A stretch of DNA of 62,100 nt, the filler included, from Sluysia triapertura (lineage: Eukaryota), in NCBI GenBank assembly GCA_046118255.1. It is 4 parts of 4 records of this genome, joined end to end, with 100 filler letters (N's around TTAATTAATTAA, not from the genome) between each part and the next. Parts side by side here need not be neighbours in the genome. Positions count along the whole stretch, not along the records: positions 26,950 to 49,691 come from JBJNIA010218473.1; 3 more parts are not named here. One strand, written 5' to 3'. The notes under the pieces were generated by a model. The model made no database searches. It was not told the DNA's origin and was given only the letters and a program-made list of their open reading frames with translations. Positions within the stretch are counted from its first letter, which is position 1, and each line of letters begins with the position of its first letter. Shown piece by piece: positions 27,903 through 49,289 of this stretch. Made by a program: the position numbers and the translations under genes.

Positions 27903-29141
27903 ATGTCTTCAAAGCAGTCTGATACAATGATACTGATAATTGACCAAAAGGTTATGAAAATATCCGAATCTAAATTAGATAAACAATATGTACACGATAA
28001 AATGCTTGATTCTTTTCCTAAAGATGTTATAATATTTCATACTCCAGATAATAAAAAAGTAGCTAATTCAGTACATGAACTAAAAAATGTTGCTAGCGTT
28101 TCACTTTGTGTAGTTTTTCAAGGTTTTATCAATGATAATGAACATAAAGCTTTTAGAAAAGTTCTAAAAAATAAATGTTATAAAAACAGAGAAATAATCA
28201 TTAGTAAATCATTGCCAAACAATCACATTACTAGATTACCGTATTATCATTATTCCTGTAACGAAGATAAAGATAAAAAATATGTGCATTTGATTGCGAA
28301 CTATGTTCCTCAGAATGTTATGCGAATTTTATCTTTTCATAATCGAAATAATCCATGTATGTCTACCATTTATTTTACTAACATTACTAACATTAATGTA
28401 AAAAATGAATTTACGTCAATAGATCTTCCTTCTCATTCCAGAATTTATTCTCAGTTGGCTATCACTAGTCTATCCACATCAAAACAATTAAAATCTTTGA
28501 AGAAAAATAAAGTTTCATTTAACAATCATAAAGAAATTATTTTAAGTAATGAGCACGATGTTTTACTGGGTCCAGACTATATCAATGTTGATCGTCCCTC
28601 GAACACTATCGCTAATGATGACAATAAAATTAACAGTCATGACAATAACAATAATAATACAACTGATGAAAGTGTAAATGGTAACCCAAAACAAAATTTC
28701 GAAAATCGTTTTGTAAAATATGAATTACATCATGATGTGAATCACAATGTTCCTGACAATAATCTACCAGAAGGCTATGAATACGTAAAGTCAATTATTA
28801 CGATCTCAAAAATAAAAGCTGAAAAAGAAGCGAAAGATTTTTTCAGCAATTTAATCTATTCTGAAGTATGTAAGTTGATATGCAATGAAAATTTTGGTGA
28901 AAATCCACATATTGATCATCTAAAAGCAGTATTTTCAACGGTAAAAAACTTTCAGTATTATTATTATTTGGCCAAAACTTTATCAATAAGTTATGGCGAT
29001 TATCAAGTGGAATTAGACTACGGAATATGCTCGTTAGATGCAGAAAAACTAGGTGCAGATAATACAATGAATATACTTGTCAAGCAAGAGTCTATAACTT
29101 TCAGGAAGAACGACATCATTAACGTAAAAATAATTTTGTAA
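27903..29141 (+). CDS. Orphan protein, cassette cargo family member B (412 aa, N-terminal part)
   Basis: Uninterrupted 1.24-kb ATG-initiated ORF 113 nt after IR2; motif homology to copy A and the 9100 fragment; no known domain recognised. Confidence 0.65.
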   Translation: MSSKQSDTMILIIDQKVMKISESKLDKQYVHDKMLDSFPKDVIIFHTPDNKKVANSVHELKNVASVSLCVVFQGFINDNEHKAFRKVLKNKCYKNREIIISKSLPNNHITRLPYYHYSCNEDKDKKYVHLIANYVPQNVMRILSFHNRNNPCMSTIYFTNITNINVKNEFTSIDLPSHSRIYSQLAITSLSTSKQLKSLKKNKVSFNNHKEIILSNEHDVLLGPDYINVDRPSNTIANDDNKINSHDNNNNNTTDESVNGNPKQNFENRFVKYELHHDVNHNVPDNNLPEGYEYVKSIITISKIKAEKEAKDFFSNLIYSEVCKLICNENFGENPHIDHLKAVFSTVKNFQYYYYLAKTLSISYGDYQVELDYGICSLDAEKLGADNTMNILVKQESITFRKNDIINVKIIL

Positions 29142-29200
29142 GTATTAATTTTTGTCTTTTTTGAATTTTCATTTAGTCATCAAACGATTTAGCCGGATCA

Positions 29201-29680
29201 ATGAAGCGCAACAAGAAAAATGGGGTTCAGTATAAAGAAGTTGGAAGGATGATATTGACTTCCAAGTCAAACAAATTAATTGTTATTTTTACAAAACCCA
29301 TTGATGTAATAAAATTTTATGTTAATAGTTCTATATTTTCAATTTGTCTTTTCAAACGTAAAATATACCTTGTATCTCGTGTTGAATTACGTAAACATAA
29401 ATCTAATAACGATAGAACTGTTGATGATTTAAGACTTAGAATAAATAAACTGATAGCTATAAGCATTCAAGCTCGAAATTTATGTAAAATTTATGAGACA
29501 AATAAGTTTGAACATAGTAAAAACTATAAGCAAAGAATGTCGATATATAATAAAGCTATATACATAAGACAACTTATTAATGTCATGACAGGAATTAATT
29601 ACGATGTAATAGGCCATCTTTTAAAATTCCATCCAAATAATCATGAAAAAACTTTTATTAAATTCTTAGATAAAAAATAA
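29201..29680 (+). CDS. Downstream part of cargo gene B (probably joined to the previous ORF through a short intron; degraded continuation to ~30000)
   Basis: The 60-nt gap has GT donors and a pyrimidine tract ending tttag; AGSMKR and IKFYVNSS align with GGTMKR and INFYIYSS in the single ORF of copy A. Confidence 0.55.
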   Translation: MKRNKKNGVQYKEVGRMILTSKSNKLIVIFTKPIDVIKFYVNSSIFSICLFKRKIYLVSRVELRKHKSNNDRTVDDLRLRINKLIAISIQARNLCKIYETNKFEHSKNYKQRMSIYNKAIYIRQLINVMTGINYDVIGHLLKFHPNNHEKTFIKFLDKK

Positions 29681-31799: not shown

Positions 31800-32092
31800 T
31801 CAAGAACGTATAATTAACTCACTTCTTCTAGTGTAACATTTTGTGGAGTTTGGTAGGTATCCGACAATACACCAAACACAAACTTCATTTGTATCTTTAC
31901 CAATTAACAATAAAGTGGAAGCATTAATTCTCTCAGGTAATTCTCCATTATGACTGAGAATTATTATAGTAGTTTGATTTTTGAGTAATTCATAAGCAAA
32001 AGGAATATTTGACGTACAATATAAACTAACTCGTGTAGTATTAACATATATACTACTATCGTTTGGCTCAACCACAGAAATAACAGCTTCAT
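31800..32092 (-). CDS. Terminal exon, small Cys-patterned probable glycoprotein, paralog 1
   Basis: Phase-1 AG acceptor; ...VSLYC...VCVWC-x10-CYTRR; several N-x-S/T sequons. Confidence 0.65.
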
Positions 32093-34008
32093 CTTTAATA
32101 ATAATAATGATAATAATTTAATTATACAATTTTATTATTATGTCACATTCATAATATATTATTTTGTGGCCAAATCTAATGTATAGCAAAATTCAACATA
32201 AATTAAATCTAATACAAAATTGGCGAGAGTCGATTATACAATAGGTACTATTAGTACTCTAATATTGACAATTATATGCAAGATATCTTTGCCTGAGATT
32301 TTATATTAAAAATACACTTCGTGTGAGTCCCTAAAAATCTTAGTCTTACACACTTCAGGCTAAGTTATAAGTAGCAAAAATAATATTTAATGGGGGTTTA
32401 TATTAATAACTAATGTTTATTTTAAGTAATCAATTACCTATTAAACCTTTGATTGATTATTCAACAAAGAGTATTGACTTATGTTAATACGTATATTCTG
32501 AGTTTAAAGTGAGTTTACTACCGTTTATAACGGTATTATTATATAACGGTTTTATTATATTCTTTAACTACGATAAAATCGGTTTTAAATATATTCAGAA
32601 AATTTGAGATTTTAAGTAAGATTTTTCTACCGAATATAAAATCGGTGCCTTAAAGTCAATAAAAATTATAAATTTTAATTAATGACAAATTCTTGGAAAA
32701 TATATTTTATCAAATTAATTTACAATCAATTAGAATTGATGTTAAAAATTAAAATCAAATATAATATAAAATATACAATTAACTAGATTAATTTATAACA
32801 TATTCAATAGATTTTAAAAGAATATTTAAAAATAAATTAAAATCGTTATCAAATTTTTCAAAATAATTTACGTGAATTTTAAGGTTCTATTTTAAGTAGA
32901 ACAAACTACAAAAAATTAACTAATCTATCAACAAAATTATATTGAAGAGATGAATAAAGTTTTTTCCACCAAATACAAAATCAATAAGTAAAAATTATTC
33001 ACCAATTACTTACAAGCAAGTTTTGAAATAAATTTAAACAAATAAATTTTTTTTAACTAATAATATGTTGAGAGATATGAATACTATTTATAGTTATTTT
33101 TCAATAAAACAAAATCAATATTATTAATGTTATTTTATATAATTATTATTCAATTTCTATTGGATGATAGAAATAAAATAGCATCAGTCTAATTATAATA
33201 GATAATTTAAAAAATATGCTGTTAGTTATACAATGTGATTCACCGAGAAATTTTATTCACGAATCATTTAAATCGACGCCATTTATCATAATGGAAAACT
33301 TTTCATATTAGTTCCATTAGCAGGAAAAGTGATCAATTCTTTTCAAGGAGAATATTTATATGATAAATTAAATTAGTAAGTTTATTCTTGTTTAAGGCAA
33401 TAGTACTCGTAAGGTAATTATAATAAAATAGACTTAACTTAAGTTTTGTAAATTATTTGCCTGATGTTTTAAGGGACAAAATAAATTTTTAACCTCATTA
33501 ACATAAAAAATTAAAGGCCATGTTAAGGCTTTAATTATAAAATAATAAATTAATCTATAATAGTTGTCTTTAATTTCTATTCTTATTACTGCTAACGTTT
33601 AGTTATATTTTTATTAATGAGGATTCGTTTTGTTCAGTTATTACGATTAATAGGTAAAGTGAGATACATTAAATAAATTACTTGATAATTAAGAACCTCT
33701 AATTAAGATAAAACGTTGCATTTACTAAAAGATAAAGTGTAGCCTAATTTTTCATATTAATTATGCTAAGATTTGTTTAACTATAGTTACAGGAACACTA
33801 TGTTTACGATGTAAGACGTTTACTGTAACCGGACCCCTGCTCAATTTTTTTGAGGCAGGTTAAAAAGTAAAAATACCACAGCATCATCATTTCAATCATA
33901 CTTAATATTTGTTTTCCAAGTGAAGCACAAATACGACATGGAACTGTTTTAATCAGATCAACGACATTGTTATTACTGTTGTACTTATTAAGATAACATA
34001 ATACATAT

Positions 34009-34286
34009 TTATTGTCTAACTATACCTTGTCTAGTATAACAAGCTACTGCCGGATCCAGAATTTCATGGGCACATGTTACACAAATTTGTTCCTCATTAT
34101 AATTTTTATGCTGCACATCTACAGGTGTGTGTAATGTATATTTGAAGTCAATAAAAATGTATCCAAATCCAAAAATTTGTTTTAATTGCAATAAAATTTC
34201 TGGACTAATTAAACAGGTAATATTATGTTTCAGTATTGGCCAATAATTTGTAATGTTAGGATACATGTGAAGTTTTACTGGTTTGC
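34009..34286 (-). CDS. Terminal exon, Cys-patterned paralog 2
   Basis: Phase-1 acceptor; ...NITC...FGFGY...ICVTC-x10-CYTRQG. Confidence 0.7.
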
Positions 34287-35549
34287 CTAATTATTCAATA
34301 ATAAAAATTATTTACAAAATTTTAATATTAAATAATAATTAACAATATGATACACATTAATCGATGCTAGAATTATTATCCAAATAGTTTTTAGTTATTA
34401 AATAAATAAATTCAATTAGGATAATAGATTTGTTTTTTGCATAGCTAGAAATTAATTTCAAAATCACTTTTATTTGAACAATCTTACATAAAGTTTGTTT
34501 CAATAATTTCGGTTTCATATATCTTGATATTATTGTTATTTATAATTTTTTAATTTATAAATTTATAATTATTTAAAAGTTTTTATAATTTAATTTTTCA
34601 AAAAATAAATAAATTATATATATAATTAATAGTTATGCAAAATTGTAAAATTAAAAATAATAATAATATTGTAAATTGAATTTTTATAAAATGTTATACC
34701 ATTCCAATAAAAAATACAAAATGACTAAGATGTTATTTGTGTATTCAATTACTTGCTCCAACATTAAAATTAGATATTCATAAATTGAAAAATGTATAAC
34801 TATATTATTAATATTAATAATTTTTAATATATTAATAAGACTATTACTTAATATACTTTGCGTGATTTAACAGTTTAATTTTTTTACATGCAAACCGTAT
34901 TACTCACGATAGAATGAAATCTTTGGTTTAAGGAAGTAGATTCAAATCGGAGAATTATTGAAATACGATTCAAAAGCATTGGACGACGATCTTCCTGATA
35001 TAAAACATTTACAAGCATATAAGAAAGATACAACATTAGCGGAAAAAACACTATGAAAAAGTAAAAGAAATAATTTCCGAAACTGATCAAAATCAAATGA
35101 ATATTTGTCAATGGATAGATTAGCAATTTATTGTTAACGCAAAAGTGTAGGCACAGGTTAAATGTAGATGTATAATCATTCTTAAAAATAAACTTAAAAA
35201 CGTTTTGAGAGAAGACAAACTTTAATGAGAAAATTCTTTCAAAATATTCACTAATTTCTTAATCTAAATTACAAAAGTGCTTGTTTTAATGTTGTTAATG
35301 GTAGATAATACAAGAAGTCTTTTATCAACAAGGTATTGCATATCAATTACACCACGAATTGACAACCTATCTCATTACTTTATATCATTGCATCATATTG
35401 CAAAAGAGAATATTGTTTTTCTTTAGTACATGAATTGTATCACCTATACTTTCCATTTATTATATAAATGAAGATAAAACTTATCACTTTTCCGGTAAAT
35501 TTTTGTAAACATTTAACTATAATCTGTTTGAAAGTTTAAATTTCATTAA

Positions 35550-35742
35550 CATGTTCGCTACCAGCGTCGCATATAATATGACATCAGTTCTTGCTTTTGA
35601 GTTCGTAGTCGCAAATGTGTGGCATGTCCACACTATTGTTAATAAATAATACTGATAAGGTAGACGCGCCACACATTTGCGAGGACGAACTCAAAAGCAA
35701 GAACTCATACGACGCAAATATGCGACGCTGATAAAGAACTTG
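35550..35742. mobile_element. Fold-back MITE, piggyBac-like (193 bp)
   Basis: ~80-bp imperfect inverted arms (e.g. AGTTCTTGCTTTTGAGTTCGT/ACGAACTCAAAAGCAAGAACT); flanked by TTAA and TTAG, consistent with a TTAA target duplication carrying one mismatch. Confidence 0.75.
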
Positions 35743-37791
35743 TTAGCATAGTATTTAATCAGTGCAATAATAAAAATTTGTACAATAATAAAAATAAGAC
35801 TACAAAGTATTAGTGCATTGTACAATTTCAGTTATTTATAGATATCTTTTTACATATATATTGAAATGAATTTTACTAGTATTTTATCAGCTGTTTAAAA
35901 TTCCATTCACAAAGTTTTATTAGTTTAAGTGTATTTTAAATCCACATAAAATGTGTTTAAAACCTAACACTTAACAAACTAACGTTAGCTGATTATGTTG
36001 GAGAGGCATAACATTAATGTGATATTGACTTTAATTACTATTTAATTATTTGGTAATCTGGACTAACATTTGATTTGATTTTACTTTATTATTTTTATTT
36101 GAAATAAATAATTTTGTAAATAATTTAAATATTATTTTTATTATATTTATAAAACATATAGTTTAGAAAATTAATATAAAATATTTTTAACAAACAAAAA
36201 TTTAGAAAATTGAAATAAAATATTAAAAAAAAAATAAAATATTTTAAACAAAATTAATAAAAATATTCAAGAAAATTTTGTTGTTTAACTAAATCAATTT
36301 TCAAATTTGCATCAATTGACGCCAATATGGCGAAATTTTAAAATTCTGCAAACAAGAAGCAATACAAGCAATTTCTGAAAATTCTCAATGATATTCAACA
36401 GTCCTGATATCCATGTTTAGGTAATATTTTTATATAAGTTTTTAAAATTCCTAATCTTATTGATAGGAAATTATTAAATTCCACATAAAATCCAAACATC
36501 TATCCTAGACCGTAACTGGCTAGGTTAACATTTTAGTGCATTAAGTGAACTATTGCTAAATTTAACTAAATTATCTTACATAAATCAGGCCGTAACCGAT
36601 TGATTCAATTTTTAAATTCTATTGTCAATCTTGTCAGACCGTATCTGGCTAACATAACCTATAAATTAATATCATTCGTTTGTTCAGAAATATTATCTAA
36701 TTGTTCATAAGCTTGCACAAATCCTTTTTAGTTTCATATTAAGCAAATTTTATTGTTACGTTAAAACCCTAAGATTTAAATCGTGTCTAATTAGGCGAAA
36801 CAACCTTCAAACTTCATTTTGTAAGTTTTAAGTCAAAAAATCTTGTAATTAAAAATATTATCCGGTTTGGTTATTGATAAGTCGAATATATGTTCGGGTT
36901 CACTAGATATTTGTGATGACGTATCTGTATATATGTATTTATGTGATGTCTCTATATCTGATTTATGTTTATGATTATTGGACATTGTAATACACGTTTT
37001 TAGCTGATTTATTAATATTATTATTATTGATTTATTATTAATTGATAATCTTGATAATATTACAATTGATAATATTTTAGAATCTTGCAAAAAATTATTC
37101 TATATTTTAATAATTTTAATAATTGATAATATTTTTGGGAAATAATTCTTTTTAAAAAAATAAACTAACGTAAGTGCTTATTAATTTATAAAAATAATTT
37201 ATTAATATTAATTAAAATAGTTTTAAATTATTTCACTTTAAATAGTTTTGTTTTAAATTACTTCAAGGACGCTACAAAATATACATAAATATGAAAAAAA
37301 TTTTAAGACACAATACAAAAAATTCAAAAAACTACGTTGGACTCACGTTAAAATCTTATTTTATTCTATAAGGATCTTATCTTACTTTTTATCGTTGAAG
37401 TCTTTAATAATACCTTGTTGTTAAATTTAAAATTATTAAAATCACGATTAAAATCATTCTACAAAAACTTATTTGCAAAACATTATTGAGTCAAATAGGT
37501 AAATTAAGAAAATAATTTTTGTGCATTGTTATTGCATATTTTAGATTCTTGTATAATGTAATAATACTACATATTCTTTATTACTTTATTGTTATTGTTT
37601 ATAATAATAATAATAATAATTATTATTATTATCATTATTATTATTTTTATTATGGGTAATTCGTAAGTTGTATTTTTAGGTACACTTTCTTTCAAATAAA
37701 TAAACACCATTATTTTTCTAAAGCAAAAATAATTCATTCTAAATAGATAACGTTCTGATATTGTACAATTTAGAATTTATTTACAAATAAA

Positions 37792-38063
37792 CTAACGAAA
37801 TGGTTCGTAACACTTTTTCTTTGATGAAACATTTTTTCCACTACAAACAAAACAAATAGTCCGGTTGTCTTTGCCAGTAATTCTTAAATATGTATTATTT
37901 ATTAACGTATATGCATGTGATGTTATATTTGTAAATTTATAATTAGTAATTAGTAAGGTTAAAAAGAATTCAGTAGGATACAGGAGACAGTAAATATCCA
38001 TTGTTTTATTAAAAATGAAAATTTCTGATGTCCAAGGAAATATAACGAATTTTGGAACAATAC
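37792..38063 (-). CDS. Terminal exon, Cys-patterned paralog 3
   Basis: Phase-1 acceptor; ...MDIYC...ITGKDN..ICFVC-x10-CYE; five sequons. Confidence 0.65.
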
Positions 38064-39033
38064 CTATATTTGAAATATTAATATTTGTAGAACTAAATTT
38101 TTCAGATAATAATTTGATTTTTCACCGCTAGTATTACGAAAAAATTAAGTTTTTTTGGATACAAAATGAATACAACATATAGAAATTGTTTTGATTGTTA
38201 TTGTTGGATTTGTTGAAAATTAAATACTTTAATTTATCGTCGTTTCGGTTTTAAAGAAGAAATGGATTGTATCATTATAAATCAGTCGAGCAATTAATAA
38301 GTTGATTTCTTCCACCTGTTCTGGTTGCATAAAGTCGAGACAAAGTTTGAAATTAAGAATTTTAGTTTGAAGAGGTTGTATGTTCAGATTCAAGAAATAA
38401 TGGAGTTAGAAGATATTCTTCAGTGACACATAAGTTTCTACCGTCAGAAACTAATTACCGCTAAATTGAACGTACGTAACACGTATCATATAGGAAATTG
38501 AAATTTTCATATCTACAAAACAAGTTCCTTCAATTTCTTAAGAAATACACTCGTGGGTATTATGTAAAATACTTCTAGGCAGCAATTACCTGAAGATTAA
38601 CAAGATGCTCAACAATAATATATACAGTTTCGTAAGCAAATAACATGTACAAGGAAAATTACAAAAATTTGTTTGAAATCTAAAAAATACGATTTCTAAC
38701 AATGCTGAACAAAACCATGCATCCATCAATGTTATGTTGCAGCTACCTAAGATTTTATTACTTTAAATTATCGTAGTAAATTTAATTATTTAACTATTTA
38801 GGACATGAACAACTTTTTAAATGATCTTGAGATAACAATACAGCCATTGCTCACTATTCAAATATTTTCATTCATATCATATACTAACTGCTTTCTTTGC
38901 TTTTAAATTATTCTAATGGCATTAAAAAGATAATCTTTTATCCTTAATTTATATAGATTTAAAAAGATTTGATATTGACCTCCTTTCTGGTATTTTTCGT
39001 CAATTATAGTTAAATCATAGTTTCAAAATCTTT

Positions 39034-39421
39034 TAATAATAATAATAATAATATTAATAATAATAATAATAGTAATAATAATAATAATATATTAATTTAT
39101 ATTGTGCTTATATCTACTCAAAAGCGGTTAAAATAATATTTCTAAAACAGAAAGAAATTTGCATTTTTCTTAAATATTTCATAATCTTCAGTAATTTGAC
39201 ATTTTTTGGTAACTGGTTGTATATTTTTGAAACATAAAAGGCATACAACCTATCACCTGTAAATTCTGTATAGATTATTATGTCTCAATGAAGTATTCTT
39301 CCTGGTTTCCAATTTTTTTATTATTTCTAAAAGATATTCAGGACTTCCGTAATTTAAGCGTTTGGAAATTATTGTCATGATTATATTCTTGCTTTTATTG
39401 GCAACCAATGTAATTACTTAA
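39034..39421 (-). mobile_element. 3' end of an L2/CR1-group LINE, second copy
   Basis: Collinear and highly similar to 23385-23810. Confidence 0.75.
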
Positions 39422-39762
39422 GATCTTCTTTCCAAAAGAGAATCATTATCATGTACATTTAATATAAGTCAATAACATTTACTATTATATTTCCAAACGA
39501 AATAAAGATAGTTTTGTTAAATTTACAGTTTAACTTTAATGACTATAATAATTTCTTGATATTTCAATGATTAAGATATTGTTTAAATTATAATACAACT
39601 ATAATATTGTACAATAATAAAACAAAGTACTGTTAAATAAATGTAATTATGAAGATCCAAAAGTGGTATTTTGATTTTAATTATTTATTTATTATTCCTT
39701 TTTTGTTTAATTATGCTACGTAGAATAAATTAATATTGTAATGATTTTTTTAACGATTAATA

Positions 39763-40037
39763 TTATAAATTTAAATTCAAACCTCTTCTTCTAAAACATT
39801 TTTCAGCAACAGGTAATATTTCATGTAAACACTTTACACATATTTTACTTTCGTTTTTAGTTTTGTAACGTATCCTCAATGGATTAAGATAAGTATAAGT
39901 GAAATTAACATATTTAAATCCATAACCGAATAATTTACTTTCTAATGATTTTTCATTTAAAGTACAGCTAATTTCCAGATCAACCTTAGGTAAGTAATAA
40001 TCAATATTTGGTGCAAGGTTTAGAAAAACTTTTAAAT
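39763..40037 (-). CDS. Terminal exon, Cys-patterned paralog 4
   Basis: Phase-1 acceptor; ...EISC...FGYGF...ICVKC-x10-CFRRRG; clearly closest to paralog 2 (PNI..Y.P, HEIL). Confidence 0.7.
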
Positions 40038-40219
40038 CTATATAAAAATAAGTTATTAGAAGAATTGAATTATTTTCAGCAAAAAAATTTAAAATAACAC
40101 ATTTCAATACCTTAAATTAAGTTTTAAAGCTTATAGATGCACCTAACTTTTACTTGAGTTATAGTTTCCGAAGGTTATCCAACTGGACTTTATTTGGAGA
40201 AAATTATAACTCCAGTTTT

Positions 40220-40255
<36 letters not shown>

Positions 40256-40275
40256 TATAATATAATAATAATAAT

Positions 40276-40317
<42 letters not shown>

Positions 40318-43300
40318 GCACTGCCAATTTCAATATTCCATATTTCTTGGGTATATTAAAGACAAGTATATACAGCTTTAGTATAATATAATATTGTGAC
40401 ACCTAATTTTTTAGTGTTATTAGTACTAAAATTACATTACTAAAACATTTCTAAAACTTAATTTACTTGCATAACCGTTTATAAAATACTCAAAACAAAA
40501 AAATCTGAAAGGAATATTAATATTATTTGAGTAATGACTTAGCACTTCATTGTCATTTAAATGAGGTCACACTTTAGCATTCATTAATCTTAAGCAGTAA
40601 TGATCATGAAATAAAACACTGAAATTTAAATTCTCAAAAATTATGTTTCTAAAGGAAATAATAATAATTATAAAAATGATGTTACTACTATTATTATTAA
40701 AATTGGTAGCTATTAAAAGTTTACGCATCATTTGTTATAGGTTATGATAAAGTGGCAGGCAGTGAGGTAAATGATTGTTACATTGCTACCGATGGAGCAT
40801 CTAGTCGCATTTTAAAAGATAATTTTAAATTAGTTAATAAGCAACATAATGTATCTTTTAATATTGGCCTTAACTGTTTTCATGGTCCTCAAATTGGTCT
40901 AGTATTGACTAAATTCAATTCGACTGTTCAAATTTTCTTGGTGATATAAGAAAAGTCTATTACTAGAATGACCAGTCAGAGTTATTTTAAAGTATTTAAT
41001 GTAGATCATGTTAACGACAGTATTAAAGCCGAAATGTAGCTAATCTGTACAATGAAGCTAATAATAAACTGTACAATCTCCAATAAATAACACTATTTCC
41101 ACATTATCATATAGATGATGTTGCACAACATACAGAAACATGTCTGGACTATAAACCTGCTATATAATGGACTGCTGTGGTTTTACGCAATGATATCGGA
41201 ACGCGATAATAAATCAAACTTCATATACAAATATTAATGTGGGAAAGCGTATATGAATAAAAGAATAAAATGCTTTATATGATGTGTGAGTCCACGTACG
41301 ATCCTACACTTACGAGGATTTTAAAGAATAATAGTAACGTGAACTTACTGGAAGTAAAAAATTATCAAAAAACATATAGTTAATTTAAATTTTTGTTCTT
41401 AAGAATTTATATTTTATTGATTAGCATTATTCAACTTTAATTAGGTCACTTTTTCTTACGTGAGACCTTTCACGGTTTCATCTTTAAATGAAACCTTAAA
41501 ATTAATATTTTAGGTTTTTCCTTTAAACAAAACCTTTAAAAATAATTTATTAAGATTCCTTTTTAAAAGAATATTTATTGCAAAATTGATTTTTTAAATA
41601 TTATCTCAATTATTTTATAAATTTTAAAATGAAACTCAATGAATATTTTATTAAGGTTTCTTATTAAATGAAGCCGTGTATAATTAAAGTTACTTTAAAT
41701 GAAACTTTTTACACTATGACATCTTTTGAATTTTAATCAATTTATAAATTCTATAATTGTACATATATTTTATAACACTTTCATTTTAAAAGAAACCAAG
41801 AAAAATACTGTTTAAATCACTTTATATTAAAATTAATGAAGAGTAAAATTTTAAATCAAAATTAACAAAATTCGAAATAGTGTTTTTAAGATATATTAAT
41901 TACAAATTAAATATTAATCAAAATTACAATGATTTAATAATAAAACTGATATAATATAGAGCTGATACAAAATATTTGTACAACATTAATTTAGTAGATT
42001 ATTCTAGTTTAATAATCTTTAACCTTTTTAAAATTGTGTTATCAACTTAAAAGATAAGTAAAAAGAGTAAAAATTTTAAGTACATTTTATGAGCAATTTA
42101 CTAAAAATTGCGAATCTAAAGAACAAAAAACTAACGATAATAATAATAATTAATATATTGTTATTCAAATTATTGTCTTAAGATGTGCTTAGCAAAAAAT
42201 ATTATTTCAAAAACGTACTGGAAATGTACTTGCCAAAATAATAGACAGTATAATATTATTCAAAATTGATACTGAACTTAAAAAATTAAAGTTGCCAACT
42301 TTATAAATAAATTGAACTTCTAATAAAAATTGTGAACTAATTATTGATATTGTACGTGAACTATGCTTGTTTTTATACCGTAAAGTTGACCTTAATGGTC
42401 TAAATATTTATAATTGCATAAGTTTAAACAAATTAATAATTATTTCGTGTACGTTTAAACAAATTAATTTGACATAATTATAATATATATTGATTCAATA
42501 ATATTAATTTTTTTTATAATATTTTTCAATAATAACGTTAATATTTTACATATTTGCATAAAAAGTCATTAAAATATTTACAAACTAATAATAATTAAAA
42601 TATAAATCTAAAATATTTACATAAAACTAGATTATTTATTGTATCTTGTAAAATGTCAATAATTTGTCTCGAGTACAACGTTACTAACTCAGTTGTTTCT
42701 CAGTCATATCTTGGGCCACGTTCGTCTAAATAAACTTAACTTTCACATTTAAGGCGACAGAAACTCTTTTTTGGCATTGACGAATAAACACATGTAATGT
42801 CTGCTTTTAATTTATTATTCAAAATTGATTTACACAAATTCAAAATGTGAGGTTAACCCTGTCACAAAGATAGCTTCAAAATGTGATCTTGTAAAATTTG
42901 CGCATTTGAGACAGTTTTAAGAGAATTCTAAATATATTTGTGGAGATTTAATTCCTAACTCTCAACAAGGAATCAGTAGGGGAAAACAGATCATATCGAG
43001 ATTCAACACTTGTTATAGAGCACCACCAGCATCGGAAAAATATTTGTCGATATTTTATTTACATTGATAAAGCTTACTTTAAGTAAGTAAATTTTCTTAA
43101 TATTGTTAATTCCTTTTAATTTAATTTATTACCGCTAAAATCACTACCAAAATAACTAGATAAAAATGTTCGGTTTTCTTACCACCTGAACAATTATAAA
43201 AATAATGAGTTTTAGAGTTTGGGTCCGCCTACGCTAAACGGTTTACCTATAAGGACGTTCACGTAGGATTTTAAAGCTTTGTCAAATAACTGAAGGTCAA

Positions 43301-44021: not shown

Positions 44022-44118
44022 AAACCAAATCGTGTTTTTATCCAAAAAACCAAATTACGTTTTATCCAAAAGACCAAATTACGTTTTATCCAAAAAACCA
44101 ATTTACGTTTTATCCAAA
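44022..44118. repeat. 24-bp tandem repeat, ~4 copies (AAACCAAATTACGTTTTATCCAAA)
   Basis: Seen directly; ~50-60-bp tandem duplications nearby at ~43675-43780 and ~44450-44570. Confidence 0.88.
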
Positions 44119-46189
44119 TGAACGTCAAAAATTCTGCTCCAAATTAAAACCAAAAAATTGTAACACAATTGAAATGTCTATAAATCTGTCTCTATGAATT
44201 CTAGATTATTAACTCTAGAATGTTTTGATTTATCTTGACTTTATATACCTTTTGATGAGTATACGTTAAAATAAATATCCTATTTTTAAAATAAATATAA
44301 CATAAATAATAGATTTCCGTTTTATTTTCGAAATTAACTAAATAATATTTCGATAAAATTTTCGTTCCATAAAATAATATAAATAAATTTTTATATATCT
44401 GTTTTGGTTATAAACAAAAATTTTATAAATAATATTATTATGAATAAAAATACTAGAATAAATTTCCGTTTTTTGAAATTTTATTATTTATAAATGAGTA
44501 ATAACATAAATACTAGATTCCGTTTTTAAAATTTGATTATTTATAAATGAGTAATAACATAAATACTAGATATTTTATTATTATTTAATTTTATTATTCA
44601 ATAAATTCATTATTATTTACAAAATTATTACTGAATTTTTTTTAATACAATTATTATTCACAATTTTATTTTAAGATAATATTATTTACAATTAATTAAA
44701 TTAATTAAATATTGTTTAATTTAATAATTTCGTGAAAAATATATACATAAAATGTATAATGAATTAACATTAGAATTAGTGAGAACTTTTGAATTTTATT
44801 AGTTTACCTAATGTTGAAATGTTTGATGCAGATAACGTAAAAATTAGTTATTTATTTAGTTTTATAATCTAAAATTAAATTTATATATGTTATAATACCT
44901 AAGTATAATTAAAGTATATATTAAATTGATGCTCATTAAGATACCAATTCAGACATGTTTTTTAAATCAACGTGCGACGACGCACGGTTGATGAATGTCG
45001 TATTGCATAAAAACTTTCTATATAAATTAAATTTGGTTTTTGATTAGTTTTACGTTTATTTTAAGTTGACATATTATATCAATGAAAAAATGATAGTGTA
45101 ATAATGATATTAAATTTTGATTGCGTTATGTTGAAAAGACAAATCCCATTTTCTTTGGGTAATTGGAAACCGACAGAAATTACTGTTGAAATTTAATTAT
45201 TGAAATTTGTCATCTTGTGACCAACTAAAAGAAATTAATAATTATAACAAGTTATTATTTCCATTTACCAATTTTTTATTTCCTAATCAACTATCTAAAC
45301 GATCTAACTTTTGTAATAAAACCAGAACAAGAGAGCTATACAACAATGAAAACTTTGAAGAGAGCTGACTCAACACAATTGTGATAAACATGGTGATTGA
45401 GAAATTATTTTTAGTAATTGACTAAATGTTATAAGCAATATTTTTATTGTTAAGATTAGTGATTTGCGTTTTTATTATTTTATTACTATTAAATTCGGGC
45501 AGCAATATTTATTGTATTGTGTTTAGTTATTAAACAGGAAAATTCATTATCTTTTTGTAAAATTCTTCCAGTACCCATGAAATTCAAAATAATTCTTTAA
45601 ATATGTGTAAATTTTTAAACGCGCTCTTAATACGGTCAACTTAATAAAGAAACCAATAATATTGATACAACCAGTATAAAGTCCAATATAATTAACTAGA
45701 AATAACTAGAAATTTTGACTCAAAACCAAACCGAGCGGGAAGTCAATCCAATAAAGTAAATCCGCAAAACAAACTAACGGGAAGAATTTCAACAAGGTTT
45801 AAATAAGTTTAATAAAATGAATAACATTCAACAAAGTCCACTGAACCAAACCAATTATTATTATTAATTTGATCAATAAAATCAAATTCAAATACGCAAA
45901 CAATCCTAAGCCATCCACAACAAAAGTAGCCAAATTCTACTAAAATAATTATCGAACCAACAAATTAAGATCAATTCAATGTCAAATAAGAAAATTTAAG
46001 ATGGCACGTACCAAAAATTATAACATTAAGGTTTTCCGCTCAACAAAGGTTCACTTACTATGATTTGCGTCATATAAATTTTAAATCCTACAATATATCA
46101 AGCGAGCCACAATTTCAATTAGTCATCGTTTACCTTGTAGAACCGACGATGATTCAGATTTTTCACTGCAAAGAACAGCGGAAGCGCTC

Positions 46190-46340
46190 ATCAATGCAGT
46201 TTTTCCTAGTTTACATCTAGTTCACCTAATACGTGGTTCATAGTCATTGAGGCTAATGTCAAAACAAACTCCATAAAACAGCAAAGTGCCAAATTTAATG
46301 AAACACTGGCAATCAAATTTGATACTAATATGTATTCAGT
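46190..46340 (+). mobile_element. Ty3/gypsy gag N-terminal relic
   Basis: FP../FTSSSPNTWFIVIEAN resembles the P.F....P..WF...EA.F gag motif; frameshifted. Confidence 0.45.
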
Positions 46341-48027
46341 CAACACTGATCAAACAAATCATCATTCAGCAAATTTGAGAGTTTGGATTTGTTAATTAAT
46401 ATTTTATTCGAATTATGGCCTCTAATGGCATTTAAGATGTCTTCTAAAAAATAATTTTGATATTTTTCTTAAATTGGAATTACTTCTGTGTCATTTTTTT
46501 GGTTTTATTAGTTTCAATTTAATGTACTGTCAACATGAGCTTTAATTAAACTTACTTTTCTATACAACCTCTATGTATCACTGTCTGTTTAACTTTATTT
46601 GAGATTTTTTCTTAAGATTTATGTATTTACTTAAATTTTCCTCATCTAAAGTTTTATTGGAATTAAATTTAATGCTGGCTTGAGTCTTAATGAACTGAAG
46701 TATGTTGGGAGTAGTGAAGGATAAAGGTCAATATGAGGGTTATGACTCAGGATAACGGAATATGGTGAATGTTATTAAAGATAAGGTAATATGATGAACT
46801 GTAATGGTAAAATAAGTATGAAAAATACTTGAATTAAAACAATAAATAATAAGAATAAGTTCAACATTATTAAAGAATTAGGATGAGGTATTATGATGAA
46901 CTGCAATGATAAGATAAGAATAGAAAATACTTAAATTAAAACAAAATAATGAGAAATATGAATAAGTAAATCTGTACAAGGTTTTATTTGTTAACATATT
47001 AAAGTACATTTATTAATTAACTTAATTCAAATTTGTTTAATTTGATTGTGGTGTCACACTTTAACACAACATACATATCATCCATCATCACCATCAATTA
47101 CACCAACATACAACAGATATTTCACTCACTATCATCATCGACCACATAACCCTCGTCACAAACAAATACTATACCAAAATAAAACGCACTTACAACATCC
47201 GCAGTATCACATCTTACCTCTCATAAACCACAAACGCATAATAAAATCTAAGTGTGATTACCAAAAGAAAATCCCTACGCCCATATTGATAAGTCAATAA
47301 AAATGTTTGCTCATGATATAATTATATTGCATTTAGTGTGTAATATTGAGTTTTATTAGTATTTTTAATGATGAAGTATATAACGTATATATAACGTAAA
47401 AATTAGTTATTTTAAAATAGGAACAAGGGTTAGTAAAATGTTCATTATTGATTACACTTCGTATTGATGCAAGTGCTAAAATTTAAATAAGTTGTCACCC
47501 CTAGTCATGTTTTTTAATATTAAAAGATTTGTAAAAAAGCAGAACTATTTTTTGTAATTGTTTTCTTGTAATATATTGTCTGCCATGAATAACTATATTA
47601 TAAACAATGTTTGGAACAAATAAAGCCTTCATAATTGTATCCCACCTCAAGTATGAAGTTATCTTTGTACATGTTAAGTATGCTCCTAATCCAGCCCAAA
47701 TCGCATTAGAATAAAAATACTAACAATAATTTACAAAGGAAATTTGATCATTAAGATAGAAAAAATGCTTGGTTAAAAAGTTGTAAAAACATCAACACCA
47801 CCGTCATTCTTCAACTAGTGACCCTTATATCGCTTAAGGTACTACCCAATTGTATTTTTGTGGTAAAGGTTTTTTTATTAATTGAATTAAAGATTTATTA
47901 ATTTAAAGTTGAGTTAATTAAATTAACTGCTATTCTTCATTCATATGAAAAATTTCGTCAATCGATTATAAAAAATTCGGTTTATATAATTCTTAAACGA
48001 ATAGTACAAATAATATATTACAAATAA

Positions 48028-48411
48028 CTAAAATGCAAATTTAGCTCGAATTTTTTCTAAATTCTTCGCAATATCGTTTGGTTCTTTACCAAGTTCCGAA
48101 CTGATGCTTCGTTGTTTAGCAAGATCCAACGTGGTGAACACTTCACACAGATCACCATCAATAACTGATTTGCAAGGAAAATAGTATGAACGATAATGTA
48201 AATGATCTCGACCAACCATACTCAAACACTCGGCTCTCAAATGCGATTCTAAAGTTTGAAAAAATTCGTATGTGTCATTTGATTGAAATGGAACAAGAAT
48301 ACCAATAGCACCGTTAATTGTTGTGTATAATAATGTTTCCAAGCCGCTTGGATTCAGTGACGCCTTTTGAATCGATGTTACCAGTTCACCGACATAGAAG
48401 TGGCAGATTAC
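48028..48411 (-). CDS. SF3B3: Splicing factor 3B subunit 3 (SAP130), last exon
   Basis: VICHFYVGE...LLYTTINGAIGILVPF...GRDHLHYRSYYFPCKSVIDGDLCE...KFAF*; ag acceptor at 48412-48413. Confidence 0.95.
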   Translation of the reverse strand, partial: VICHFYVGELVTSIQKASLNPSGLETLLYTTINGAIGILVPFQSNDTYEFFQTLESHLRAECLSMVGRDHLHYRSYYFPCKSVIDGDLCEVFTTLDLAKQRSISSELGKEPNDIAKNLEKIRAKFAF

Positions 48412-48765
48412 CTATATAATAATAACAATTTTAACAAAAATACCATCAATATTTTAAAAACAAGTTGGTTAGTGAGTGGTGCACTTTAGAAGCAGCACAC
48501 ATACAATTTTAATATTTCAAAAACAAATTCGATATAAATACTTTTGAGGCTTAACATAATTAAAATCTGCTCGATACTTTTTTAATAACATTGAATAAAA
48601 TTTTAAATTTTCTTTATTTTAGTATCAAAATTTATATTTATTTTATTTCCAAAATGCTTATGACAATAAAAACAGTTTGTTAGAGGAGACTGAAATGGCA
48701 TTATGTTTGGTGCTTGATTGCTTAATATATTTGAAAATGAGTCAACGAAAAACAATATCACATAC

Positions 48766-49086
48766 TTCCACTTTTTGACTGCAGCCTCCTAAATGCCCAC
48801 GTTCCCACAATGCTTTACTACCACTAGGATCTTCTTCTACATCATCGGTGACATCCTTGGGAAGTCTCAGAACAGCAATATTTCCGAACTTGTCGGCTGC
48901 CACGGCCGTGTCATTGTCCAGAATACAAACATGATTTACCCAGCGTGTTATAGTGTCATCTGCGAATATTACAAGTTGGTTCTCTGCTCGACGATGATAT
49001 TTCACCCAAAATATGCTGTCTTGCATATCGGCAACAACAATACGACTTTTGTACGATTGAATAGTGACGATTTTGTACGGAAAATT
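48766..49086 (-). CDS. SF3B3: SF3B3 penultimate exon
   Basis: ENQLVIFADD...ADKFGNIAVLRLP...DVEEDPSG..ALWERG; cag/gtatgt boundaries, 321 nt. Confidence 0.95.
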
Positions 49087-49289
49087 CTGTGGAAAAAATA
49101 ACAATCATATTTCACTTTTAATATAAATTTATATTCAATTAAATCATTTAAATCAAAATTTAATATTAATCGAATACATTTTTGCTACAATTTGATGTAA
49201 AATGATTATATTTAATATTTGTAATAATAAAAATATCTGCAGATGAATTATTGTGTCAATCGTAAATCAAAGCTCACCAAATACATCAA

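What the first reader, a model, noticed from the sequence alone, without database searches (positions are those of the whole stretch)
31800..40037. Tandem array of four divergent paralogs with a C...CxxC-x10-C[YF] domain
Seen: four co-oriented terminal exons of 293, 278, 272 and 275 nt. Each begins at a phase-1 AG acceptor and has an early Pro, one Cys ~25 aa in, an invariant CxxC-x10-C[YF] end and 2-5 N-glycosylation sequons. Identity is otherwise low (pairs 2/4 and 1/3 are closer). The P...x-L/I-x-C start and phase-1 intron recall an Ig-like exon, but the core Trp is missing. Inference: a rapidly diversifying family of small secreted or surface glycoproteins (host interaction, gamete recognition or immunity); alternatively, alternative last exons of one gene.
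Basis: partly seen in the sequence, partly recalled or inferred. Interest (0 to 1): 0.72.

Follow-up and report, generated by a model that had tools for sequence, protein, structure and literature searches.

The report
Four internal exons, unannotated Ig-like repeat
Four minus-strand exons each encode one copy of an unannotated, roughly 88-residue, four-cysteine, glycosylation-rich Ig-like domain, and they are internal, frame-preserving repeat exons of a larger secreted or surface protein rather than last exons of four small genes.

Summary
The four exons are real and homologous. A profile built only from sequences outside this window finds them at E 2e-8 to 4e-18 and finds nothing else in the piece.

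They are not terminal exons. Each has a phase-1 AG acceptor and a phase-1 GT donor placed four codons plus one base after the last Cys. Their lengths are 270, 261, 267 and 255 nt, all multiples of three.

The only relatives among 1.84 billion proteins are five short ORF calls on metagenome contigs under 1.2 kb. These have the same exon borders.

Two of those contigs (L003, L006), from different samples, carry three such exons in a row with introns of 50, 162 and 54 nt. So the domain is a serial repeat within one protein.

Pfam and PDB sequence searches give nothing. AlphaFold models (pLDDT 76 and 81) give a generic Ig-like beta sandwich. Foldseek finds IgSF adhesion domains only at E about 1e-2, and VIA-align Z is 7.5 or less.

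Four invariant Cys, enriched N-x-S/T sequons and a conserved sequon position point to a secretory-pathway glycoprotein.

No RNA data exist, and I found no signal-peptide, membrane or other exon. One gene versus two, and constitutive versus alternative splicing, stay open.

Verdict: a new sequence family of a known kind of module, of moderate interest.

The parts
39783..40037 (-). Repeat exon 4 (the most 5' in the transcript), 255 nt, phase 1-1. Acceptor AG at 40039-40038, donor GT at 39782-39781.
   Evidence: Sequence read. Non-window profile E 2.8e-13. 37% identical to exon 2.
37797..38063 (-). Repeat exon 3, 267 nt, phase 1-1. Acceptor AG at 38065-38064, donor GT at 37796-37795 (ttc|gttagt, the weakest donor of the four).
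   Evidence: Sequence read. Non-window profile E 4.3e-18. Donor score 2.6 against 5.3-9.1 for the others.
34026..34286 (-). Repeat exon 2, 261 nt, phase 1-1. Acceptor AG at 34288-34287, donor GT at 34025-34024.
   Evidence: Sequence read. Non-window profile E 3.5e-11.
31823..32092 (-). Repeat exon 1 (the most 3'), 270 nt, phase 1-1. Acceptor AG at 32094-32093, donor GT at 31822-31821 (aa|gtgagt, the strongest donor).
   Evidence: Sequence read. Non-window profile E 2e-8.
48031..49104 (-). Last two exons of the upstream neighbour, splicing factor 3B subunit 3. They set the 5' limit of the repeat gene at about 48030.
   Evidence: Pfam CPSF_A at E 1e-28 and 2e-23. Aligns end to end with the C-terminus of human SF3B3.
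27903..29677 (+). Convergent plus-strand open frames of 412 and 159 aa. They have no family match and no relatives. If they are a gene, they set the 3' limit of the repeat gene at about 29700.

Best explanation
The four exons are internal, symmetric (phase 1-1) exons. Each encodes one complete copy of a previously unannotated domain of about 88 residues.

The domain is a seven-strand Ig-like beta sandwich without the usual core Trp. I infer that it is held by two disulfides. One runs from the strand-B Cys to one Cys of the strand-F C-x-x-C. The other runs from the second C-x-x-C Cys to the strand-G Cys, across a fixed 10-residue F-G hairpin.

The copies are most likely spliced in series, in the order exon 4, 3, 2, 1, into one transcript, or at most two. 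That transcript would encode a secreted or surface-anchored, N-glycosylated multi-repeat protein. The conserved framework (strands A, B, E, F and G) would carry a variable C-to-E face that does the binding.

Shown here: homology, exon borders and phases, the Cys pattern, sequon enrichment, and serial arrangement in a related organism.

Inferred: the disulfide pairing, secretion, serial splicing in this genome, and an adhesion or recognition role.
For: (1) Conserved borders. All four window exons and all six complete exons on metagenome contigs L001-L004 start two bases after an AG. All ten end one base before a GT, at the same aligned position. All ten lengths (255-270 nt) are multiples of three.

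(2) Serial arrangement. L003 carries consecutive family exons at 189-455 and 618-875. A third runs from 930 to the contig end and continues at 1-138 through a 55-nt end overlap. The introns are 50, 162 and 54 nt. L006, from another sample and another assembler, shows the same 1052-bp three-exon unit at 99.4-99.8% identity in the order c-d-b-c.

(3) Not first exons. No ATG-started signal peptide lies in the open frame upstream of any acceptor. No paralogous leader or tail exons lie between the copies.

(4) Duplication pattern. Exons 2 and 4 are 37% identical, and the largest gap (3.5 kb) falls between the pairs [4,3] and [2,1]. This fits duplication of a two-exon block.

(5) Fold. AlphaFold gives pLDDT 75.9 and 80.6, with the first Cys in strand B, the C-x-x-C in strand F and the last Cys in strand G. 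The top Foldseek rows are IgSF adhesion domains: NEGR1, MDGA1, Dscam1, CD22 and Fc-epsilon-RI.

(6) Secretory hints. Every complete exon has four Cys, except one metagenome exon that has five. Sequons are 2-4 times over shuffles. One sequon hot spot (alignment columns 49-52) is kept in 9 of 11 exons.
Against: - There is no RNA evidence. The only run holding this DNA is not on record as RNA, and read laying laid nothing.
- I found no signal-peptide, transmembrane or other exon in the 18 kb available. The gene model is incomplete.
- Introns here are 1.7-3.5 kb against 50-162 nt in the related contigs. Splicing behaviour could therefore differ.
- The structural matches are weak (Foldseek E about 1e-2, Z 7.5 or less) and fit any Ig-like sandwich.
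- I could not read model coordinates, so the disulfide pairing is an inference.
- The donor of exon 3 is weak.
Confidence: 0.62

Rival explanations
1. The four exons are alternative cassette or mutually exclusive exons of one gene. Each mRNA would carry one exon or a subset, giving isoform diversity in the manner of arthropod Dscam exon clusters.
For: - All exons are symmetric, so any combination keeps the frame.
- They are paralogous and co-oriented in a cluster.
- (UUA)n tracts lie upstream of exons 4, 3 and 1. A complementary (UAA)n tract lies 144 nt downstream of exon 3. Predicted duplex energies are -27 to -36 kcal/mol, against -8 to -17 for shuffles. Such pairing could in principle loop out exons.
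Against: - Identity is only 17-37% and lengths differ (255-270 nt). Known mutually exclusive clusters have near-equal, much more similar exons.
- In L003 and L006 the exons are joined by ordinary short introns in a repeated three-exon unit, which is the signature of serial domains.
- I found no flanking constant exons.
- The A/T microsatellites are expected in DNA of 22% G+C, and the downstream tract is self-complementary.
Confidence: 0.15
2. There are two to four separate small genes. Each would have its own short 5' signal-peptide exon and 3' exon around one or two repeat exons.
For: - The copies are spaced 1.7-3.5 kb apart, which leaves room for extra small exons.
- The 3.5-kb gap between the pairs [4,3] and [2,1], together with the closeness of exons 2 and 4, fits two two-domain genes.
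- Short signal exons diverge fast and would escape my scans.
Against: - All-against-all comparison of six-frame segments from the gaps and flanks found nothing above noise.
- The scan for an ATG, a hydrophobic stretch and a phase-1 donor gave only four weak candidates. Two lie inside a transposon-like or hairpin region.
- Related contigs show many exons per gene.
Confidence: 0.13
3. The domain is an intracellular zinc-binding module that uses the C-x-x-C plus two further Cys (or His), not a disulfide-bonded extracellular domain.
For: - Four invariant Cys include a C-x-x-C, often followed by x-His.
- The only PDB sequence hit, at a non-significant E of 0.75, is a zinc finger of RBM10.
Against: - There is only one C-x-x-C. 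The first Cys is 44-46 residues upstream, inside a predicted beta strand.
- The His is not conserved: it is absent in window exons 1 and 3 and in the L003 exons.
- Sequon enrichment and a conserved sequon position argue for the secretory pathway.
- Phase 1-1 exons are typical of extracellular modules (established knowledge).
Confidence: 0.05
4. The four exons are decaying remnants (pseudo-exons) of a once longer repeat gene and are no longer expressed.
For: - I found no other exons and there are no RNA data.
- Long A/T-rich gaps with a transposon-like fragment and a hairpin repeat lie around the exons.
- The donor of exon 3 is weak.
Against: - All four frames are open for 93-117 codons in DNA where a stop is expected about every 11 codons.
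- All four Cys, the Pro and both splice sites are kept in every copy, despite identity of only 17-37%.
Confidence: 0.05

Closest known systems
Immunoglobulin-superfamily I-set/C2-set domains of cell-adhesion proteins (Dscam1, NEGR1/IgLON, MDGA1, CD22, perlecan Ig3)
   Same: - A beta sandwich of about 85-90 residues.
- A Cys in predicted strand B and a Cys in strand F about 47 residues apart.
- An L/I-x-I strand-E motif before the F-strand Cys.
- One domain per phase 1-1 exon.
- Tandem repeats and N-glycosylation.
- These are the top Foldseek rows.
   Different: - No Pfam Ig-clan model matches any of 12 copies, even at E 10.
- There is no core Trp in strand C.
- The D-x-G-x-Y-x-C motif is replaced by I-C-x-x-C.
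- An extra invariant Cys sits exactly 10 residues after the C-x-x-C.
- A short helix is predicted where strands C/C' should be.
- Structural scores are only at the generic level: TM 0.5-0.6, Z 7.5 or less.
Domain 1 of ICAM, VCAM-1 and MAdCAM-1 (Ig domains with a second disulfide)
   Same: - Short I-set-like sandwiches with an additional disulfide besides the B-F one.
- They appear among the VIA-align rows at Z 6.5-7.3.
   Different: - From established knowledge, their extra disulfide links the B-C region to the F-G region, not F to G within a C-x-x-C.
- There is no sequence similarity.
- They are vertebrate proteins.
Arthropod Dscam clusters of mutually exclusive Ig-coding exons
   Same: - A co-oriented cluster of paralogous exons.
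- Each exon encodes all (exon 9 cluster) or half of an Ig domain and preserves the frame.
   Different: - Here identity is 17-37%, lengths are unequal and introns are kilobases long.
- I found no constant flanking exons.
- Relatives show the exons in series within a repeated three-exon unit.
Other Ig-like repeat modules (bacterial Big_2, PKD, macroglobulin MG domains, phage tail-tube Ig-like domains)
   Same: They have comparable Z (6.5-8.6) and TM (up to 0.77 against an Atlas model) to the predicted fold.
   Different: - They have no Cys framework and no sequence match.
- They come from different kingdoms or domain contexts.
- The resemblance is at the level of the common sandwich only.

Membership tests
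Immunoglobulin superfamily (Pfam clan Ig, CL0011) | Significant match to an Ig-clan profile (ig, I-set, V-set, C2-set, Ig_2, Ig_3) | tested here: not met
   hmmscan of the 4 window exons and of all 12 aligned copies against Pfam-A at E up to 10 gave no Ig-clan family. A profile search of PDB sequences gave no Ig chain.
Immunoglobulin superfamily (Pfam clan Ig, CL0011) | Core Trp in strand C, 10-15 residues after the first Cys | tested here: not met
   There is no Trp at that position in any copy. Most copies have no Trp at all.
Immunoglobulin superfamily (Pfam clan Ig, CL0011) | Disulfide between strands B and F | tested here: inconclusive
   Invariant Cys fall in predicted strand B (residue 25) and strand F (69 and 72) of the models. 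I could not read coordinates and no experiment exists.
Immunoglobulin superfamily (Pfam clan Ig, CL0011) | D-x-G-x-Y-x-C motif at strand F | tested here: not met
   The copies have G-x-I-C-x-x-C instead. No Tyr sits two residues before the Cys.
Immunoglobulin superfamily (Pfam clan Ig, CL0011) | Greek-key beta sandwich of 7-9 strands superposable on IgSF domains | tested here: inconclusive
   The models have pLDDT 76 and 81. The best Foldseek rows are IgSF but at E 1e-2 and TM 0.5-0.6. VIA-align Z is 7.5 or less for model 2 and 8.6 for model 1 (a phage Ig-like domain), which is within the range the tool calls common.
Immunoglobulin superfamily (Pfam clan Ig, CL0011) | One domain per symmetric phase 1-1 exon (typical of the family, not strictly defining) | tested here: met
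   All 10 complete exons have this structure.
Dscam-type mutually exclusive exon cluster | Alternative exons of nearly equal length and high mutual similarity | tested here: not met
   Lengths are 255, 261, 267 and 270 nt. Identity is 17-37%.
Dscam-type mutually exclusive exon cluster | Exactly one exon of the cluster per mRNA | not testable with these tools
   No RNA run holds the locus and read laying laid nothing.
Dscam-type mutually exclusive exon cluster | Docking and selector intronic pairings | tested here: inconclusive
   The only complementary elements are (UUA)n and (UAA)n microsatellites. They are compositionally trivial in this DNA.
Zinc-finger / zinc-ribbon modules | Two closely spaced ligand pairs (C-x-x-C or C-x-x-H twice) | tested here: not met
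   There is one C-x-x-C only. The other two Cys are 44-46 residues before it and 10 residues after it. The His is not conserved.

The most novel reading that the evidence does not exclude
The locus encodes a lineage-restricted recognition protein whose symmetric repeat exons are combined variably. Exon choice would be steered by pairing between one (UAA)n tract downstream of exon 3 and alternative (UUA)n tracts upstream of exons 4, 3 and 1. This would be a microsatellite-based analogue of the Dscam docking/selector mechanism, acting on a domain family that no database describes.
Probability: 0.06. Interest if true: 0.7.

Novelty: new variant of a known kind. Interest (0 to 1): 0.4.

Why it matters
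The domain has no Pfam, PDB-sequence or annotated-protein relative among 1.84 billion representatives. Yet it is conserved, with its exon borders, in A/T-rich DNA from several independent samples.

That makes it an undescribed extracellular repeat family of a poorly sampled animal lineage.

It shows how an Ig-like sandwich may do without the core Trp, by adding a second disulfide clamp.

It also flags a gene that automatic annotation evidently misses. If the protein is a surface adhesion or recognition molecule, its near-identical tandem three-exon cassettes in a relative and its divergent copies here would be a useful case of repeat turnover.

Beyond that it is an ordinary kind of gene architecture.

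Tried and rejected
Searches that found no relative or no family:
- Pfam on single exons and on all 12 copies: nothing.
- PDB sequence profile: nothing.
- Rfam on the whole piece: nothing.
- Word-based protein search with the family alignment: only two already known fragments.
- JGI metagenome contigs and IMG/VR scans with the family patterns: pattern matches, but no confirmed relative.
- The top hit of the big profile search, a 2614-aa protein (P0001), is a cystatin-repeat cathepsin hit in 11 short stretches. I rejected it as a repeat artefact.

Searches for more of the gene:
- Other family copies or fragments in the piece: none.
- Paralogous leader or tail exons between copies: noise only.
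- Signal-peptide first exons (ATG, hydrophobic stretch, phase-1 donor): none at strict settings, four weak ones when relaxed.
- DNA-level similarity of the flanks: only A/T microsatellites.

RNA evidence:
- One run holds the DNA and it is not on record as RNA.
One later local script scanned the whole piece for A/T tracts and printed nothing from those places.

Organism:
- The sample accessions of the metagenome hits appear in no paper.
- The 412-aa neighbouring ORF has no relatives.
- The SF3B3 exon is 83% identical to an unnamed Logan fragment and 67% to a tapeworm fragment. It aligns end to end with human SF3B3 at E 2e-41; I did not compute the percentage identity.
- Atlas hints are Arthropoda for the family and Nematoda for SF3B3.
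- The source is an A/T-rich animal and the phylum stays open.

Full report
SETTING

The piece (26950-49691) has 18-33% G+C in 1-kb windows and 19-28% across the finding itself.

On the minus strand, its right end carries the last two exons of splicing factor 3B subunit 3. Pfam CPSF_A matches at E 1e-28 and 2e-23. The exon aligns end to end with the C-terminus of human SF3B3.

Its left end carries plus-strand open frames of 412 and 159 aa. These have no family match and no relatives.

Whatever gene owns the four exons must therefore lie between about 29700 and 48030.

THE OBSERVATION

The other three pattern matches in that scan are short, unrelated frames that the family profile does not pick up.

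In each case AG is followed by two bases that complete a codon, which is phase 1.

The four translations align with five invariant positions: one Pro and four Cys.

A profile built only from sequences outside this window finds the four at E 4e-18, 3e-13, 4e-11 and 2e-8 among 607 six-frame segments. The next segment scores 0.003 and lies in the wrong frame of the SF3B3 exon. So the homology is real and there are exactly four copies here.

Each exon has exactly four Cys and 2-5 N-x-S/T sequons. That is 2-4 times the number in residue shuffles.

Exons 2 and 4 are 37% identical. Exons 1 and 3 are 22% identical, barely above the remaining pairs at 17-21%.

The exons are not terminal. Immediately after C[YF] plus three codons plus one base, every copy has a GT:
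- aa|gtgagt at 31822
- ag|gtatag at 34025
- tc|gttagt at 37796
- ag|gtttga at 39782

With these donors the exons are 270, 261, 267 and 255 nt. All are multiples of three and all are phase 1 at both ends.

The decisive support comes from relatives, described next.

RELATIVES

A HMMER profile search of 1.84 billion cluster representatives returned six proteins.

One, a 2614-aa cystatin-repeat cathepsin, is hit in 11 short stretches. I rejected it as an artefact.

The other five (84-113 aa) are bare ORF calls on metagenome contigs under 1.2 kb with 24-29% G+C. None carries a name.

On L001, L002 and L004 the family exon is 264 nt. It has the same phase-1 AG and GT at the same aligned positions.

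L003 (1107 bp) is the key contig. It holds consecutive family exons at 189-455 and 618-875. A third runs from 930 to the contig end and continues at 1-138 through a 55-nt overlap of the contig ends. The introns are only 50, 162 and 54 nt.

L006, from a different sample and assembler, shows the same 1052-bp three-exon unit at 99.4-99.8% identity. It runs c-d-b and back into c.

Exons 50 nt apart cannot be separate genes or last exons. They are serial repeats of one protein. In that organism the three-exon cassette is itself tandemly repeated in near-identical copies.

No annotated longer protein with this domain exists in the library searched. Scans of JGI metagenome contigs and IMG/VR found none.

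WHAT THE DOMAIN IS

No Pfam family matches any of the 12 copies, even at E 10. No PDB sequence matches the profile.

AlphaFold2 models built on the small family alignments reach mean pLDDT 75.9 (window exon 1) and 80.6 (L002 exon). Both are beta sandwiches. The first Cys lies in the second long strand, the C-x-x-C in the penultimate strand and the last Cys in the final strand. A short helix and a low-confidence stretch sit in the middle.

For the better model, the best Foldseek rows are IgSF adhesion and receptor domains: NEGR1, MDGA1, Dscam1, IgLON5, CD22, perlecan Ig3 and Fc-epsilon-RI. These score only E about 1e-2 and TM 0.5-0.6.

The rows mix IgSF, macroglobulin, phage and bacterial Ig-like domains. 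The tool itself calls that range common.

The Atlas feature search puts the family nearest to unnamed, mostly arthropod-labelled clusters and, more distantly, V-set/ig clusters.

I conclude that the fold is an Ig-like sandwich. Membership in the immunoglobulin superfamily proper is not established. The profile match, the core Trp and the D-x-G-x-Y-x-C motif were all tested and not met.

HOW IT PROBABLY WORKS

These steps are inferred:
- One Cys of the C-x-x-C pairs with the strand-B Cys, as in the canonical Ig disulfide.
- The other pairs with the strand-G Cys, across an F-G hairpin whose length is invariant at 10 residues.
- This second clamp may compensate for the missing Trp.

Three things point to the secretory pathway:
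- enriched sequons
- a sequon hot spot kept in 9 of 11 exons, at alignment columns 49-52
- phase 1-1 exons, which from established knowledge are typical of extracellular modules

The most variable and least confidently modelled part is residues 30-60, the C-to-E face. That is the likely binding surface.

I therefore read the locus as part of a gene for a secreted or surface multi-repeat glycoprotein in which exons 4, 3, 2 and 1 are joined in series.

The 37% identity of exons 2 and 4, and the largest gap (3.5 kb) falling between the pairs [4,3] and [2,1], suggest duplication of a two-exon block. Two two-domain genes would also fit this pattern.

WHAT IS MISSING

There are no RNA data. I worked beside those places afterwards.

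I found no signal-peptide exon, membrane anchor or other exon:
- The open frames upstream of the acceptors contain no ATG-started leader.
- An all-against-all comparison of the gaps and flanks gave only noise.
- A scan for an ATG, a hydrophobic stretch and a phase-1 donor gave four weak candidates. Two lie in a transposon-like patch or a hairpin repeat.

In DNA this A/T-rich, open frames of 45-70 codons are expected by chance at about one per kb per strand, so such frames carry no weight.

RIVALS

Alternative or mutually exclusive use of the exons is possible, because any combination keeps the frame. Complementary (UUA)n and (UAA)n tracts do flank exons 4, 3 and 1. However, low identity, unequal lengths and the serial cassettes in L003 and L006 argue against a Dscam-like cluster.

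Separate small genes cannot be excluded without RNA, but nothing repeated lies between the copies.

A zinc-binding reading fails on the ligand pattern and on the glycosylation signal.

Decay is unlikely, given four open frames of 93-117 codons with all key residues and both splice sites intact.

ORGANISM

This is not resolved.
- The SF3B3 exon is 83% identical to an unnamed fragment from a G+C-normal genome (L005, 52% G+C) and 67% identical to a tapeworm fragment. It aligns end to end with human SF3B3 at E 2e-41; I did not compute the percentage identity.
- Atlas hints point to Arthropoda for the family and Nematoda for SF3B3.
- The source is an A/T-rich animal from a poorly annotated lineage.

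VERDICT

The 'terminal exon' and 'four small genes' reading is wrong.

The thing itself is a new sequence family of a familiar kind of module: an Ig-like, phase 1-1 repeat exon. Interest is moderate.

Noticed in passing
window 40216-40320, 39026-39096, 37574-37656, 32094-32140: On the minus-strand RNA, (UUA)n tracts lie 183 nt upstream of exon 4, between exons 4 and 3, and directly upstream of exon 1. A (UAA)n(UUA)n tract lies 144 nt downstream of exon 3. Predicted duplexes are -27 to -36 kcal/mol, against -8 to -17 for shuffles. All three period-3 arrays that Tandem Repeats Finder reports in the 22.7-kb piece lie in this exon cluster. The downstream tract is self-complementary, and such repeats are common in A/T-rich DNA.
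   Followed up: partly
L003 1-1107 and L006 1-1171: Two assemblies from different samples close on themselves around the same 1052-bp unit of three family exons, at 99.4-99.8% identity. This implies a tandem array of near-identical three-exon cassettes in that organism, through recent amplification or homogenisation. The copies in the window are old and divergent by contrast.
   Followed up: partly
window 35583-35708: An inverted repeat with 54-nt arms, 85% complementary and 18 nt apart, sits in the G+C-richest patch (42%) of the 3.5-kb gap between exons 3 and 2. It could be a hairpin-forming element or a small transposon remnant.
   Followed up: no
window 46210-46392 (+): An open frame has a weak match to Pfam DUF7041 (E 3e-5, below the cut-off) in a 40% G+C patch upstream of the exon cluster. 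I take it, from memory of where DUF7041 occurs, to be a transposon fragment; this was not checked.
   Followed up: partly
window 27903-29138 and 29201-29677 (+): Two long open frames (412 and 159 aa) are separated by 62 nt and converge on the repeat gene. They have no Pfam family, and the word-based protein search found no relative for the 412-aa frame; the 159-aa frame was not searched for relatives. Frames this long are very unusual by chance in DNA of about 27% G+C, so this may be an orphan gene.
   Followed up: partly
window 44036-44118 and 44464-44571: There are tandem repeats of 24 nt (3.5 copies, 94% matches) and 53 nt (2 copies, 94% matches) in the region between SF3B3 and the exon cluster.
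   Followed up: no
The stretch is an A/T-rich 15-nt tandem repeat in the intron between exons 3 and 2.
   Followed up: no
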